From NCBI RefSeq assembly GCF_001194135.2, contig NC_068986.1, forward strand, positions 77,884,499 to 77,948,498: a DNA stretch of 64,000 nt. Reading direction: 5' to 3'. Shown here in pieces: positions 13,861-51,090 of the stretch (position 1 is its first letter; each line of letters opens with the position of its first letter). The translations under genes were made by a program, and so were the position numbers. The stretch is from Octopus bimaculoides. Taxonomy: Eukaryota. The notes under the pieces were generated by a model. The model was not told the origin of the DNA. It saw nothing but the letters and a program-made list of their open reading frames with translations, and did no database searches.

Positions 13861-14083
13861 TCGCTTGCCTTAATAAGTCTTCCAAGCTGAGTTTCGTGTC
13901 CAATGAAGGAGACGGCGTTGGCACGGGTGCCAGTCGTCGAATTTAGTTCGATTTCACATGCCTCAATAAGTCTTCACAAGCGGAATTTAGTGTCCAATGT
14001 AGGAAAGGTACGCATAACTGGGCTGGCTACACCCCTGGCAGAGACCTTGGATTTAGGTCTCACTGAGTAACCAGTTGCATGTA

Positions 14084-14136
<53 letters not shown>

Positions 14137-14287
14137 CATGTATCTGAAAAAGAAGCACACTCTAAAACATAAAGCAGTAATGCATTTATAAGTAGTGGAG
14201 TCCACGTCCAGTCATAGAGTAACCAATGATTTCACGCCCACAAAAGCCTTAGCCAGAGGGGACATGAGTTACTTTTGTTTTCAGCTT

Positions 14288-14352
14288 TAGAGTCTGATGA
14301 GGCATTCACAGAGCTAATGACTTTGTGGATGTGAAACCATTGGTCTACTCTA
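14288..14352 (+). ncRNA. Type I hammerhead ribozyme motif, near-intact
   Basis: Stem I TAGAGT/ACTCTA; core CTGATGA (14294-14300); 12-bp stem II GCATTCACAGAG/CTTTGTGGATGT; GAAA; stem III ACC-ATT-GGT; GTC site followed by one extra T. Confidence 0.75.
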
Positions 14353-14382
14353 TGACCGAACTTAGATTCAACTACTTATATA

Positions 14383-14436
<54 letters not shown>

Positions 14437-14572
14437 TATCTTGCTATGACATTGCAATACTAATAACTTGGAGTAGAACTAAATGCACATATGCTTCAGA
14501 CTAGTGGAGTACAGAATGGTAATAAGAAATTAAGATGACATAGGAATAAACAATTATCTTATTAACTTCATT

Positions 14573-14653
14573 AGCTTACAGCTGTTTCTGCAATATGAAG
14601 CAGTTGACTCATAGTTGAGTGTCTGAGTATCACATTATAGCTTCATCAGAGCT
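14573..14653 (-). ncRNA. Minimal PLE-type hammerhead motif with palindromic stem III
   Basis: Minus strand AGCT-CTGATGA-A-GC...GC-A-GAAAC-AGCT-GTA-AGCT. Stem I AGCT/AGCT, palindrome ACAGCTGT, GTA cleavage triplet. The stem II closing pair is A/A. Confidence 0.7.
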
Positions 14654-14748
14654 TCAAGCATTGAGTCCACTGCATCATATATATATGAAGTTAAATGAAG
14701 AGTAGGAAGTTAATAATTATTTATTATTGACAAATTGGTCATCTTTAC

Positions 14749-14844
14749 TTCTTACAGCCATTTCAGTTAATACTGAATAATTTAATTACAAATCTGTGCA
14801 TTAAATTTACATTTATGCAACATGAGCATAATTTCATCAGAGAA
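14749..14844 (-). ncRNA. Degenerate minimal hammerhead motif (tandem partner)
   Basis: Minus strand TTCT-CTGATGA-(long stem II)-GAAAT-GGCT-GTA-AGAA. Stem I TTCT/AGAA is intact; stem III has two substitutions relative to GAAAC-AGCT-GTA. Confidence 0.55.
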
Positions 14845-15753
14845 AAAGATATACCTTGAGTCTGCTGAAATGAACTGATAGGTTGGCATGTTACATCTCA
14901 AGGAAGACGATATATATATGTATATATATACATATATATATTTGAATCCTTGTGACTTAGTCGTTTAGCAAAGGCATAGGATAAGTACCAGATATATAAA
15001 AAATTGTGATGAGATATTGTTCCATTTGTTTTGTCTCTAGAGTGGCTGAGTTCCTTTTGAGCATTGGGCCTCACAAAGGAAATGACAAAGATCTTTGGCT
15101 TTATGTCATGCTTGAGAAGAAGACCCATCAAGCCAAGCAATTTTGCAGTCATGGCAGATACTGGTGTCACACAAATGGCCACCATGCCGGTAACACATAA
15201 AAGTATCCATTACACTCTCTATGCAGTTGGCATTATGAAGTGCATCCAGCTGTAGAAAACCATGTCAAATGTGACTGGAGTCTGGTGCAGCCTTCTAGCG
15301 TGCCAGCCCAGGCAAACCATTCGACTCAGCATGGACAACGGACATTAAATGATGATGATGGTTTTGATGACAATGTGGAATTAAATCAGAGAATGAAATA
15401 TAGTTGGTGAAATATTAAATATTTCCTCATTTCATGATATACAAAGATATTGTATTGACTCTTGATAATGCTGACAAATTCCAGTGTCTTAATTTATTTC
15501 TAGGAATTCTATTTAGTTTGCAATGTTGCTAAGTCATAGTTTTTTAAATCATAACAGTCACTGCTTGCCACTGCCCACCCACTTTATTATTAGTATTAGG
15601 GCCAGGTCTCTGATTTGAGACTGCCTTCCTCGACTAGTTTCAAAGGCCCTGTGAAAAGATTAAGGAGCCATAGACACTGCCTTTCTCTCTCAGATTAAAA
15701 GGAAAGCAGCATAACTTAGTAGCTTTTCTCTCCTGTTGCTGCCGTTGTTATTG

Positions 15754-15799
<46 letters not shown>

Positions 15800-16735
15800 A
15801 ATAGCAATGAAAAGTGACAAATGATTAAAGACTATGCTGGGACAGATCCATCTAACCCATGCCAATATGAAAAAGAAAGATGCCAGTTGATCATGATGAA
15901 GACAACCATGATGATGAGGATGTTGAGGATACTGTAATGTTTTGTATTATTGTTAACTTATTTAAATTGTTGTAAACTACTGAACCTGAAATGGTAGGAG
16001 CTATGTGGGTTATACTGCATGTAAGTTTCATTGTGTGTCTATGGTGAGTATGTGTGACATGTGTAAAGCCAGTGATGAAGTGTATTATTTTGAATAGTCT
16101 AAATATTTTTGCAGCTTGTAACAAAAGAAATCAAGAGCTCAACTGGAATGGAAGCATTGTTTGCAAACTTGCATCAGATTATCTTTATTTGATTAAATGA
16201 TAAATGAAGTGCTGATGAGAACTCTGGGTGTTAAATCATTTCCATGTATTAATTAGGATAATGATACTTTGCTATGGAGGAGAGGATGTCAAATTAAATA
16301 AGCCAGTATTTTACATCCTGTTTCTTGGTCATGTATTTATGGTAACATCACTTGTGCTGGTGCAATGAAAAAAGTACTCTGTATATGTTTGGAAATTAGG
16401 AAGAACATCCAGTCATAGAAACTATGCCAAAACAAACATAGGAGCATGGTGCAGTTGTCAGGCCCATCAGATTCTACCCAGCAGTCCAGCCTGTATCAGG
16501 AGGAAAGATAGACATTAAAAGATGATGATGAACAATTCTTGGGTTAAATGTTTAACTGAATGATAAATGTAAAAGATTTTTTCCCTTTGAATTTAAACTG
16601 AATGCTTCTTTCTTGATCTGATTTTCAGAAAACTGTATTTATTTATTGATATTATTTTGATATACAGAGTAAAAACTTAATAGTACATAAAAAACACTGT
16701 AGGACAAGAGTTTAATGAAAAAAAAACACTCTTAC

Positions 16736-16887
16736 CTTAATACTACAATAAAACCATCAAATAAATTGAACCCGTCACTAATGTATCCAAAAAGACCATA
16801 CGCTGCAACTTTGAGCAGCATCTCAACAGCAAAAAGAAAACTGAAGACTATATTGCTGTATTCTAATGCTTGTGTCAATTCTTCTGG
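16736..16887 (-). CDS. Cav3: Cav3 exon, domain II S2-S3 ([51 protein letters not shown])
   Basis: Acceptor attttatttgcag|, donor AG|gtaaga. 152 bp, phase 0 to 2. QPEELT..LE.SNIVF...FA.EMLLK is characteristic of Cav3. Confidence 0.97.
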
Positions 16888-42951: not shown

Positions 42952-43287
42952 ACTTGGGGATGGTCATATTGCCAGTTTAGCCAATAAAAACACACGCACT
43001 GTATATNNNNNNNNNNNNNNNNNNNNNNNNNNNNNNNNNNNNNNNNNNNNNNNNNNNNNNNNNNNNNNNNNNNNNNNNNNNNNNNNNNNNNNNNNNNNNN
43101 NNNNNNNNNNNNNNNNNNNNNNNNNNNNNNNNNNNNNNNNNNNNNNNNNNNNNNNNNNNNNNNNNNNNNNNNNNNNNNNNNNNNNNNNNNNNNNNNNNNN
43201 NNNNNNNNNNNNNNNNNNNNNNNNNNNNNNNNNNNNNNNNNNNNNNNNNNNNNNNNNNNNNNNNNNNNNNNNNNNNNNNNNNNNNNN

Positions 43288-43358
<71 letters not shown>

Positions 43359-50370: not shown

Positions 50371-50503
50371 ACAACAAGATTGCCTGCTTCAGTGTGCCAG
50401 CAAATTTAAAGGAAGTCTGAAGGAAAGTTTTAGCAAAAACAATGGCGGGGCAATGAGACATGAGATGATGCATATATATATTTATATAGATAGATAGATA
50501 TAA

Positions 50504-50541
<38 letters not shown>

Positions 50542-50781
50542 NNNNNNNNNNNNNNNNNNNNNNNNNNNNNNNNNNNNNNNNNNNNNNNNNNNNNNNNNNN
50601 NNNNNNNNNNNNNNNNNNNNNNNNNNNNNNNNNNNNNNNNNNNNNNNNNNNNNNNNNNNNNNNNNNNNNNNNNNNNNNNNNNNNNNNNNNNNNNNNNNNN
50701 NNNNNNNNNNNNNNNNNNNNNNNNNNNNNNNNNNNNNNNNNNNNNNNNNNNNNNNNNNNNNNNNNNNNNNNNNNNNNNNAA

Positions 50782-51090
50782 GCCAGTCCAGGGGCGCTGG
50801 TAACGATCTCGCTCGAAAATCCTACAGGAGCCAGTCAGGCGGTACTGGCAACGGCCACGCTCAAAATGGTGCATCTCATGTGCCACCCGCACAAGAACCA
50901 GTCCAGGGGCACTGGCAACGATCTTACTTTGCTTGCCGGGTCTTCTCACGCACAGCACATTTCCAAAGGTCTCGGTCAGTAGTCATCGCCTCGGTGAGGC
51001 CCAATGTACGAAGGTCTTGCCTCACCACCTCAGCCCAGGTCTTCCTGGGCTTACCTCTTCCACGGGTTCCCTCAACTGTTAGGGTGTGGC
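50782..51090 (-). mobile_element. RTE LINE 3' end
   Basis: TLTVEGTRGRGKPRKTWAEVVRQDLRTLGLTEAMTTDRDLWKCAVREKTRQAK* plus UTR subrepeats. Confidence 0.88.

What the first reader, a model, noticed from the sequence alone, without database searches (positions are those of the whole stretch)
14573..14844. Tandem pair of minimal hammerheads in the sense orientation of the Cav3 pre-mRNA
Seen on the minus strand: TTCT-CTGATGA...GAAAT-GGCT-GTA-AGAA, then about 95 nt later AGCT-CTGATGA...GAAAC-AGCT-GTA-AGCT. Each has its own complementary stem I, which is covariation between the two motifs. The second has a full catalytic core and the palindrome ACAGCUGU. Known: PLE minimal HHRs with palindromic stem III cleave as dimers when in tandem (Cervera and De la Pena 2014). 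Inference: these could cleave the intron 8944-16735 co-transcriptionally, about 1.9 kb downstream of the IIS2-S3 exon and upstream of the S4 exon.
Basis: partly seen in the sequence, partly recalled or inferred. Interest (0 to 1): 0.72.

Follow-up and report, generated by a model that had tools for sequence, protein, structure and literature searches.

The report
Decayed hammerhead-like repeat pair in intron
Two neighbouring sequences in an intron of an octopus-type T-type calcium channel gene carry the full hammerhead-ribozyme core and are not a chance match, but they most likely are worn-out remnants of a ribozyme-bearing mobile element rather than working ribozymes that cut the channel's pre-mRNA.

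Summary
On the minus strand, 14844..14749 and 14653..14573 each read helix I (4 bp), CUGAUGA, a long insert, GAAA, a 2-bp/tetraloop helix III, GUA, then the helix I complement. These are the only two such matches in 64 kb (0.0245 expected). Given the two heptamers, both being completed by chance has p≈5e-6. They lie in the sense strand of a 7.8-kb Cav3-like intron, 1.9 kb from the IIS2-S3 exon.

The functional reading is weak:
- No Rfam hammerhead model matches, even at E≤10 in 96–116-nt searches.
- Helix II is a 54/69-nt insert whose base is A·A (unit 2) or A-U then A·C (unit 1), not G10.1-C11.1.
- The hammerhead folds sit 5.8/9.3 kcal/mol above each unit's MFE, and 18–24 kcal/mol above the ensemble in context, because 14515-14762 forms a strong inverted-repeat hairpin (z −5.8).
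- A unit1–unit2 double hammerhead would keep only 2 of 4 helix I pairs.

The 476-bp AT-rich block sits between (TA)n tracts, a known target of Penelope-like elements. Best reading: decayed fragments of a hammerhead-carrying retroelement. This is ordinary for invertebrate genomes. No other copies or orthologues could be fetched.

The parts
14749..14844 (-). Unit 1, a hammerhead-like type I motif. Helix I 5' strand UUCU 14844-14841; core CUGAUGA 14840-14834; 69-nt 'helix II' insert 14833-14765; GAAA 14764-14761; helix III U-G plus loop GGCU 14760-14755; U16.1 and A17 at 14754-14753; predicted cleavage 14753/14752; helix I 3' strand AGAA 14752-14749.
   Evidence: The constrained hammerhead fold is -5.8 against an MFE of -15.1 kcal/mol, and helix II does not form one hairpin.
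14741..14850 (-). Possible outer extension of unit 1's helix I: AUCUUU 14850-14845 pairs with AAAGAU 14746-14741 (6 bp) across a GU bulge at 14748-14747.
14573..14653 (-). Unit 2, a hammerhead-like type I motif. Helix I AGCU 14653-14650; core CUGAUGA 14649-14643; 54-nt 'helix II' insert 14642-14589 (A.A, G-C, C-G, U.U, A-U, U-A, A-U, then an irregular hairpin); GAAA 14588-14585; helix III C-G plus loop AGCU 14584-14579 (palindrome ACAGCUGU); U16.1 and A17 at 14578-14577; predicted cleavage 14577/14576; helix I AGCU 14576-14573.
   Evidence: The constrained fold is -10.5 against an MFE of -16.3 kcal/mol. The helix II insert alone folds at -11.2 kcal/mol, z -1.27.
14515..14762 (.). Imperfect inverted repeat (long hairpin) centred near 14638/14639. 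It pairs the spacer after unit 1 with the region after unit 2, and places unit 2's CUGAUGA at the apex.
   Evidence: Inverted self-alignment of 65% over 261 nt, E 3e-17. RNA fold of the minus strand -71.5 kcal/mol, z -5.8; plus strand -74.7, z -4.8. Arm-to-arm similarity z 6.8, 0/1000 shuffles.
14434..14909 (-). The whole AT-rich block (31% G+C) that holds both units, lying between two (TA)n microsatellites. Inferred to be one or two insertions of a hammerhead-bearing element.
   Evidence: No second copy in the window.
14377..14433 (.). (TA)28 microsatellite flanking the block on the low-coordinate side.
14910..14941 (.). (AT)16 microsatellite flanking the block on the high-coordinate side.
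14677..14686 (.). Short (AT)5 tract between the two units. It may be a remnant of the microsatellite target between two separate insertions (inference only).
16736..16887 (-). Upstream exon of the host gene: Cav3-like T-type calcium channel, domain II S2-S3. The 5' splice site GTAAG begins at 16735.
8760..8944 (-). Downstream exon (approximate bounds), domain II S4-S5: [25 protein letters not shown].

Best explanation
The pair is a relic of a hammerhead-carrying mobile element of the Penelope-like-element (pLTR) or non-LTR-retrozyme kind.

- Two related but diverged copies, or a complex tandem/inverted insertion, landed in the same orientation in a (TA)n microsatellite inside the Cav3 intron.
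- The conserved boxes (CUCUGAUGAA, GAAA-YR-GCUGUAAG) and the compensated helix I were shaped by selection for a type I hammerhead while the element family was active. In that family the ribozyme would process the element's own RNA.
- At this locus the copies have since drifted. Helix II has mismatches at its base and the block now folds as a long inverted-repeat hairpin.
- Today the motifs are probably inactive or very slow, and probably have no role in Cav3 expression.

Shown: the motifs, their non-randomness, the flanking microsatellites, the competing hairpin, and the failure of the family models.
Inferred: the retroelement origin, two insertions versus one, and present inactivity.
For: Non-random collinear boxes:
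- Only two descriptor hits in 64 kb against 0.0245 expected.
- Both heptamers being completed has p=5e-6.
- The 14-nt 3' box is unique to the two units.

Selection rather than neutral drift of a copied chance motif:
- The rest of the units is barely alignable. The helix II interiors are not similar (177/500 shuffles do as well). The tails show only weak direct similarity (1/1000 shuffles; blastn E 0.24).
- By my own estimate, neutral drift would keep both motifs intact only about 6e-5 of the time. It would almost never produce two double compensatory changes in helix I.

Fit to known min-HHRs:
- Helix I of 4 bp, a short helix III with a palindromic loop, and an unpaired A after A9 followed by G-C/C-G in unit 2 all match the description in PMC4209133.

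Fit to known element biology:
- Penelope-like elements show insertion bias for microsatellites and form tandem and inverted partial copies (PMC8557442). The block lies between (TA)28 and (AT)16.
- Octopus genomes carry many Penelope-like elements, with a burst about 56 My ago (PMC13282606). The giant squid has 235 Rfam Hammerhead_1 loci (PMC6962438).
- Low G+C (31%) and a 176-191 nt spacing fit non-LTR retrozyme unit sizes of 51-972 bp. About 44% of Xenopus copies overlap introns.

Decay:
- A.A, or A-U followed by A.C, at the base of helix II.
- No Rfam hit.
- Hammerhead folds disfavoured by 5.8/9.3 kcal/mol locally and 18-24 kcal/mol in context.
Against: - No reverse-transcriptase or GIY-YIG ORF and no second copy of the element in the window.
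- Family membership could not be tested against an octopus genome or a repeat library.
- Inserts of 54 and 69 nt in place of helix II are far longer than in described PLE and retrozyme hammerheads (helix II of 4-8 bp).
- The strongest homology signal in the block is inverted, not tandem (E 3e-17 against 0.24). Under a simple inverted-duplication model, unit 2's 3' box would lie in sequence antisense to the spacer.
- Short purine-rich motifs (ATGAAG, GTAAG, AGCT) recur locally, so simple null models may overstate significance.
Confidence: 0.5

Rival explanations
1. There is no hammerhead ancestry. The block is an AT-rich inverted-repeat element (a MITE or foldback-type element, or a local inverted duplication) built from short recurring motifs. 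Within it, hammerhead-like boxes arose and were copied fortuitously.
For: - The dominant signal is a DNA-level palindrome that is equally stable on both strands.
- The plus strand at 14435-14540 looks like a degenerate inverted copy of unit 1 without a core (borderline, 60/1000 shuffles).
- AGCT occurs four times in unit 2, and ATGAAG-like motifs recur in both orientations.
- No Rfam hammerhead hit.
- Perreault et al. warn that consensus-conforming hammerheads occur by chance in large data sets (PMC3088659).
- TA-rich targets are also typical of many DNA transposons (my own knowledge).
Against: - Two complete, collinear motifs on one strand have p about 5e-6 even when the heptamers are granted.
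- The identical 10-nt and 8-nt G/C-containing boxes stand out against otherwise unalignable interiors.
- Neither helix I lies symmetrically about the dyad centre, so the palindrome does not supply those helices for free.
Confidence: 0.3
2. One reading: the two motifs are active, possibly domesticated, hammerheads. They cleave the nascent Cav3 intron, alone or as a dimer, and so modulate channel expression or release a 176-nt RNA (14752..14577).
For: - The core is complete in both units, and helix I is compensated.
- Boxes that are perfectly kept while the flanks have diverged is also the pattern expected from purifying selection at this locus.
- The helix III heteroduplex AUGGCUGU/ACAGCUGU forms 8 pairs, at -7.9 kcal/mol.
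- There is a precedent: intronic type I hammerheads are conserved in the RECK, CTCL and DTNB genes of amniotes (PMC6155905).
- In viroid-like RNAs the hammerhead fold is normally a metastable alternative to a rod (my own knowledge). The unfavourable equilibrium energies are therefore not decisive.
Against: - Mismatches at the base of helix II, and inserts of 54/69 nt.
- Unit 1's insert does not form a single hairpin.
- No recognisable loop-loop tertiary contacts.
- No covariance-model match.
- Forcing the folds costs 18-24 kcal/mol in context.
- Trans helix I keeps only 2 of 4 pairs.
- Comparable min-HHRs gave no monomer cleavage and weak dimer cleavage in vitro (PMC4209133).
- No conservation or expression data could be obtained.
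Confidence: 0.07
3. One or two intron-encoded C/D box snoRNAs. CUGAUGA contains the C box UGAUGA, the units are 81 and 96 nt long, and each has a short terminal stem.
For: - All weak Rfam hits on the two units are C/D box families (SNORD11B 17.3 bits, snoR31 18.6, snoMe28S-Cm788 17.7).
- Size, sense orientation in an intron and a terminal stem all fit.
Against: - The scores are far below the gathering thresholds (36-90 bits), with E-values of 0.7-9 in searches of about 100 nt.
- No CUGA D box lies next to the 3' strand of the terminal stem. The conserved 3' box reads GCUGUAAG.
- The conserved GAAA and the compensated stem sit exactly as a hammerhead requires.
Confidence: 0.03

Closest known systems
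Minimal type I hammerheads (min-HHRs) of Penelope-like elements (Cervera & De la Pena 2014, PMC4209133)
   Same: - Exact CUGAUGA / GAAA / UH core.
- Short helix I (4 bp).
- Very short helix III with a palindromic loop (unit 2: ACAGCUGU).
- An unpaired nucleotide after A9 followed by G-C (unit 2).
- Occurrence as nearby pairs and as solo motifs away from any ORF.
- AT-rich context next to microsatellites.
- Helix changes between copies that are compensated.
   Different: - The described helix II is 6-8 bp with a small loop and a conserved G10.1-C11.1. Here the inserts are 54 and 69 nt, with A.A, or A-U then A.C, at the base.
- No PLE ORF or pLTR is identifiable in the window.
- No genome-wide consensus family could be examined.
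Metazoan non-LTR retrozymes: tandem repeats with type I hammerheads expressed as circRNAs (PMC7229834; bioRxiv 10.64898/2026.07.22.740005)
   Same: - Two same-strand motifs 176-191 nt apart.
- Low G+C (31%).
- A predicted 176-nt cleavage product with a more stable fold than shuffles (z -3.5).
- Intronic copies are common in Xenopus.
   Different: - Retrozyme units within an array are near-identical and carry canonical hammerheads that Rfam-type models detect. Here the direct similarity outside the boxes is weak and the main homology is inverted.
- Only two units are present.
Intronic hammerheads of amniotes (RECK, CTCL, DTNB; Rfam HH9/HH10; reviewed in PMC6155905)
   Same: A type I hammerhead core in the sense strand of an intron of a protein-coding gene.
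   Different: - Those are canonical and highly conserved across species, with tertiary-contact loops and demonstrated cleavage.
- Here conservation is untested, the loops are absent and helix II is aberrant.
Palindromic MITE / foldback-type repeats
   Same: A 248-nt imperfect inverted repeat that folds equally on both strands, is AT-rich and is embedded in TA repeats.
   Different: - No clear terminal inverted repeats with target-site duplication at the ends of the block.
- No second copy in the window.
- This kind does not explain two complete collinear hammerhead cores.

Membership tests
Hammerhead ribozyme (type I) | Conserved core: C3 U4 G5 A6 N7 G8 A9, G12 A13 A14, the A15.1-U16.1 pair, and H17 not G. 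| tested here: met
   Both units carry every core nucleotide, with H17 = A.
Hammerhead ribozyme (type I) | Helix I formed by the strands flanking the motif. | tested here: met
   UUCU/AGAA and AGCU/AGCU are 4 Watson-Crick pairs each. Unit 1 can add 6 more pairs across a 2-nt bulge.
Hammerhead ribozyme (type I) | Helix II is a hairpin that stacks directly on the core through a 10.1-11.1 pair (normally G-C). | tested here: not met
   - Unit 2: A.A, then G-C, C-G, U.U.
- Unit 1: A-U, then A.C.
- The inserts are 54 and 69 nt, and unit 1's insert does not form one hairpin.
- 10.1-11.1 is the most conserved pair after 15.1-16.1 (PMC3088659).
Hammerhead ribozyme (type I) | Helix III closing the junction. 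| tested here: met
   A15.1-U16.1 plus C-G (unit 2) or U.G (unit 1), capped by a tetraloop. This is as weak as in many metazoan type I motifs (PMC4209133).
Hammerhead ribozyme (type I) | A match to the curated covariance models (Rfam Hammerhead_1, _3, _II, HH9, HH10). | tested here: not met
   No hammerhead hit at gathering score in the window, at E<=10 in 1 kb, or at E<=10 in 96-nt and 116-nt searches.
Hammerhead ribozyme (type I) | The hammerhead fold is energetically accessible. | tested here: not met
   - The constrained folds lie 5.8 and 9.3 kcal/mol above the MFE of the isolated units.
- They lie 18.4 and 24.4 kcal/mol above the ensemble of the 466-nt block.
- z-scores of the units are about 0.
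- Caveat: nearest-neighbour models ignore the tertiary energy of the core and co-transcriptional folding.
Hammerhead ribozyme (type I) | Site-specific self-cleavage that gives 5'-OH and 2',3'-cyclic phosphate ends. | not testable with these tools
   Needs in vitro transcription and RNA end mapping.
PLE min-HHR (Cervera & De la Pena 2014) | Located in the flanking repeat (pLTR) of a Penelope-like element, or in a truncated copy of one. | tested here: inconclusive
   - No RT or GIY-YIG ORF in the window.
- Most described motifs are solo, however.
- The flanking (TA)n fits the PLE bias for microsatellites.
PLE min-HHR (Cervera & De la Pena 2014) | An unpaired nucleotide between A9 and 10.1, a G10.1-C11.1 pair, and a helix II of 6-8 bp. 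| tested here: not met
   - Unit 2 has the extra A and then G-C/C-G, but also an extra A between C11.1 and G12.
- Unit 1 lacks the G-C.
- Both have long inserts.
PLE min-HHR (Cervera & De la Pena 2014) | Palindromic 15.2-16.2 and loop 3, allowing a dimeric (double-hammerhead) helix III between tandem copies, with helix I formed in trans. | tested here: inconclusive
   - Unit 2's ACAGCUGU is a perfect palindrome. Unit 1's AUGGCUGU is not, but it pairs with unit 2 over 8 bp (2 of them G.U).
- Trans helix I keeps only 2 of 4 pairs on each side.
PLE min-HHR (Cervera & De la Pena 2014) | Membership of a multi-copy consensus family with covariation in the same genome. | not testable with these tools
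   - No cephalopod genome is searchable here.
- There is no other copy in the window.
- Exact-ORF look-ups and a metagenome pattern scan returned nothing.
Non-LTR retrozyme | Head-to-tail tandem units, each with one type I hammerhead. | tested here: inconclusive
   - Boxes are collinear at a spacing of 176-191 nt.
- The tails are weakly similar (1/1000 shuffles; blastn E 0.24). The interiors are not alignable.
- The stronger signal is inverted.
Non-LTR retrozyme | Low G+C (<45%) and a unit size within the known range. | tested here: met
   31% G+C. Units of 176-191 nt fall within the reported 51-972 bp.
C/D box snoRNA | A C box RUGAUGA and a D box CUGA brought together by a terminal stem. | tested here: not met
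   UGAUGA is present, but no CUGA lies next to the 3' strand of the stem (GCUGUAAG instead). Only sub-threshold Rfam hits of at most 18.6 bits.

The most novel reading that the evidence does not exclude
The two motifs are working members of an undescribed hammerhead variant with a long, irregular helix II and a non-canonical 10.1-11.1 position. They would be retained under selection in the Cav3 intron, where transient co-transcriptional folding lets them nick the nascent pre-mRNA or release a 176-nt (possibly circular) RNA.
Probability: 0.06. Interest if true: 0.7.

Novelty: new member of a known kind. Interest (0 to 1): 0.3.

Why it matters
If the relic reading is right, this is one more hammerhead-bearing retroelement fragment in an invertebrate intron. 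Such fragments occur by the thousand in many metazoan genomes, so it has little consequence for Cav3 biology.

It is mildly useful in two ways:
- It is a pointer that octopus genomes hold a hammerhead family with an unusually long helix II that Rfam models miss.
- It is a worked example of how a complete hammerhead core can be statistically real yet probably non-functional.

Only if cleavage or cross-species conservation were shown would it bear on the open question of whether intronic hammerheads regulate host mRNAs outside amniotes.

Tried and rejected
- **Rfam at three scales**: no hammerhead hit, only noise-level C/D snoRNA and (TA)n-driven miRNA hits.
- **C/D snoRNA reading:** rejected because there is no D box.
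- **Tandem-duplication model:** only partly upheld. TRF finds no tandem repeat. A third unit upstream (S0) or downstream (X3) is not supported. The 5'-box-like sequences at 15451..15428 and 15402..15379 are at chance level.
- **Rod-like retrozyme monomer:** the 176-nt cleavage-to-cleavage RNA folds with z -3.5 as a circle. However, sliding windows show that equally low z-scores arise from the (TA)n tracts and the hairpin apex, so this is not specific. The spacers alone do not fold.
- **Relaxed descriptor:** three more hits in the window (11459-11508 +, 53310-53382 +, 2639-2539 -). All have non-consensus N7 or poor helices, and I judged them chance.
- **Search for the element or an orthologous locus elsewhere:**
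  - No other copy in the window.
  - Four exact-ORF look-ups in public assemblies returned nothing.
  - A metagenome pattern scan returned nothing.
  - No supplementary sequence file is held for the 2014 PLE paper.
- **PLE proteins near the site:** none.

Full report
**What is there.** On the minus strand the window reads UUCU-CUGAUGA-(69 nt)-GAAA-U-GGCU-G-UA-AGAA at 14844..14749. After 95 nt it reads AGCU-CUGAUGA-(54 nt)-GAAA-C-AGCU-G-UA-AGCU at 14653..14573. Both units carry the whole hammerhead core, not only the second: C3-A9, G12-A14, A15.1-U16.1 and H17 = A. Unit 1's helix I can extend by six further pairs (AUCUUU 14850-14845 with AAAGAU 14746-14741) across a GU bulge.

**Gene context.**
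- The exon ending at 16736 matches domain II S2-S3 of T-type channels (Cav3.2 9ayg and Cav3.1 6kzo, E about 1e-27; Pfam Ion_trans).
- A GTAAG 5' splice site starts at 16735.
- The next minus-strand exon near 8944-8760 encodes [25 protein letters not shown], which is IIS4-S5.
- The motifs therefore lie in the sense strand of a 7.8-kb intron, 1.9 kb from its 5' end.

**Is it more than chance? Yes.**
- I used a strict descriptor: exact CTGATGA, GAAA within 100 nt, a 15.2-16.2 pair, a 2-8 nt loop, U, then H that is not G, and four Watson-Crick helix I pairs. It finds only these two sites on both strands of the window, out of 12 CTGATGA heptamers.
- Two thousand first-order Markov simulations give 0.0245 hits per window and never two.
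- With both heptamers planted in sequence of local composition, each is completed with probability 0.0022-0.0024, and both with 5e-6.
- The 3' box GAAAYRGCTGTAAG has only these two perfect matches in 64 kb.
- The units share the collinear blocks CTCTGATGAA and GAAA-YR-GCTGTAAG. Their 54/69-nt interiors are no more alike than shuffles.
- The inner two pairs of helix I are identical in the two units. The outer two differ by double compensatory changes.
- If one chance motif had simply been copied and left to drift to the roughly 65% identity seen in the alignable tails, my back-of-envelope estimate is that both copies would still satisfy the descriptor about 6e-5 of the time. Two compensated pairs would be rarer still.
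- The boxes therefore bear the mark of selection for this fold at some stage.

**What argues against working ribozymes.**
- No Rfam hammerhead model (types I, II, III, HH9, HH10) matches. This holds at gathering score in the window, at E<=10 in 1 kb, and at E<=10 when each unit is searched alone in 96 or 116 nt. The only hits are noise-level C/D snoRNA families.
- The place of helix II is taken by long inserts. Their bases read A.A, G-C, C-G, U.U in unit 2 and A-U, A.C, U-A in unit 1. The 10.1-11.1 pair, normally G-C, is the most conserved pair of the family after 15.1-16.1 (PMC3088659).
- Unit 2's insert can form one irregular hairpin (-11.2 kcal/mol, z -1.3). Unit 1's cannot.
- The constrained hammerhead folds lie 5.8 and 9.3 kcal/mol above the MFE of the isolated units. 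The units' folding energies do not differ from shuffles.

- 14515-14762 is an imperfect inverted repeat. Its inverted self-alignment is 65% over 261 nt, E 3e-17. Arm-to-arm similarity has z 6.8, 0/1000 shuffles.
- As RNA it folds into a long hairpin of -71.5 kcal/mol (z -5.8) on the minus strand and -74.7 (z -4.8) on the plus strand. It is therefore a DNA-level palindrome with no strand bias.
- It pairs the spacer after unit 1 with the sequence after unit 2. It puts unit 2's CUGA into the apical stem and buries unit 1's 3' box at its base.
- In the 466-nt block, forcing hammerhead 1, hammerhead 2 or both costs 24.4, 18.4 and 42.9 kcal/mol of ensemble free energy.
- Caveat: viroid-type hammerheads are also metastable alternatives to a rod, and folding during transcription could favour unit 1 briefly.

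**The dimer idea.** The palindrome ACAGCUGU of unit 2 can pair with AUGGCUGU of unit 1 over eight positions, two of them G.U, at -7.9 kcal/mol. In a double hammerhead, however, each active site takes its helix I 5' strand from one unit and its 3' strand from the other. Here that leaves two of four pairs on each side. Published min-HHRs of this type did not cleave detectably as monomers and cleaved only weakly as dimers or trimers in vitro (PMC4209133).

**What it most likely is.**
- The 476-bp block (14434-14909, 31% G+C) lies between a (TA)28 and an (AT)16 microsatellite, with a short (AT)5 between the units.
- Penelope-like elements carry type I hammerheads in their flanking repeats. Most genomic motifs are solo or truncated copies. 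The described motifs have a 4-5 bp helix I, a tiny palindromic helix III and an unpaired nucleotide after A9 (PMC4209133).
- These elements insert preferentially into microsatellites and form tandem and inverted partial copies (PMC8557442).
- Non-LTR retrozymes are their non-autonomous derivatives. They have AT-rich units of 51-972 bp, and about 44% of Xenopus copies overlap introns (PMC7229834; bioRxiv 10.64898/2026.07.22.740005).
- Octopus genomes hold many Penelope-like elements, with a burst about 56 My ago (PMC13282606). The giant squid genome has 235 Rfam Hammerhead_1 loci (PMC6962438).
- The most economical account is this. One complex insertion, or two insertions, of diverged members of such a family landed in the same orientation in a TA microsatellite. 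Their boxes and compensated helices were shaped while the family was active. Neutral decay at this locus then followed: helix II mismatches, and a degenerate inverted copy on the plus strand at about 14435-14540 (borderline).
- I give this 0.5.

**Rivals.**
- An AT-rich palindromic repeat with fortuitous hammerhead-like boxes (0.3). This is favoured by the dominance of the inverted signal, the local recurrence of AGCT, ATGAAG and GTAAG, the abnormal helix II and the lack of any model hit. It is disfavoured by the joint statistics.
- Active or domesticated ribozymes acting on Cav3 pre-mRNA (0.07). This is not excluded, because 'boxes kept, the rest diverged' is also what locus-level selection would give, and amniote intronic hammerheads set a precedent (PMC6155905). 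Every structural test short of the core argues against it, and conservation could not be examined.
- C/D snoRNAs (0.03). These are rejected for want of a D box.

**Limits.**
- No cephalopod genome, repeat library or transcriptome was reachable. The window holds no second copy and no PLE ORF.
- Exact-ORF look-ups in public assemblies and a metagenome pattern scan were empty.
- Family membership, copy number, orthologue conservation and activity therefore remain untested.

**Verdict.** The hammerhead/retroelement ancestry is plausible. The proposed function is unsupported. Such fragments are common in invertebrate genomes, so interest is modest (0.3). The only unusual trait is the long helix II, which would matter only if the family consensus or an assay showed it to be compatible with cleavage.

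Noticed in passing
window 14515-14762: A 248-nt imperfect inverted repeat forms a long hairpin on either strand (z about -5 to -6). Beyond its overlap with the hammerhead-like units, it could be a MITE or foldback element, or a hairpin-RNA source.
   Followed up: partly
window 13609-13678 and 13724-13793; similar sequence near 50800-50980: Two 70-nt direct repeats, 93% identical and 115 nt apart. Their translation resembles an ORF at 50482-50982 (…MCHPHK.QSRG.GN…). This looks like a dispersed SINE-like repeat family.
   Followed up: no
window about 14960-15345 (minus strand): A repeat of SINE-like appearance (…gtccgttgtccatgctgagtcgaatggtttgcctgggctggcacgctagaaggctgcaccag…) lies directly upstream of the (AT)16 tract. 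The 95-aa ORF at 14898-15185 has no Pfam match and is not on record in public assemblies.
   Followed up: partly
whole window: There are 3463 N in several assembly gaps (for example near 1700-2250, 4150-4420, 12400-13050, 28250-28650, 43000-43300, 57870-58230, 59330-59720). Almost all are bordered by TA/TG/CATA microsatellites, so microsatellite-rich introns were hard to assemble.
   Followed up: no
window 11459-11508 (+), 53310-53382 (+), 2539-2639 (-): Three further matches to a relaxed hammerhead descriptor (N7 free, helix I of at least 3 bp with G.U allowed). The one at 11459-11508 has a U-tract in place of helix II. I judged all three to be chance.
   Followed up: partly
window 1155-1589 (+): A 144-aa ORF (…LGDQVSSQEGCSESVAVRIRITWAKFRELLPLLVTKGLSLRVKGRLYDACIQTAMLHGSETWAV…) resembles, from memory, the C-terminal region of a non-LTR retrotransposon ORF2. 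It has no Pfam hit at E<=0.01.
   Followed up: partly
window 28946-30343 (-): A 465-aa open frame made almost entirely of F/S/L/P, from a long CT-rich low-complexity tract. It is not a gene.
   Followed up: no
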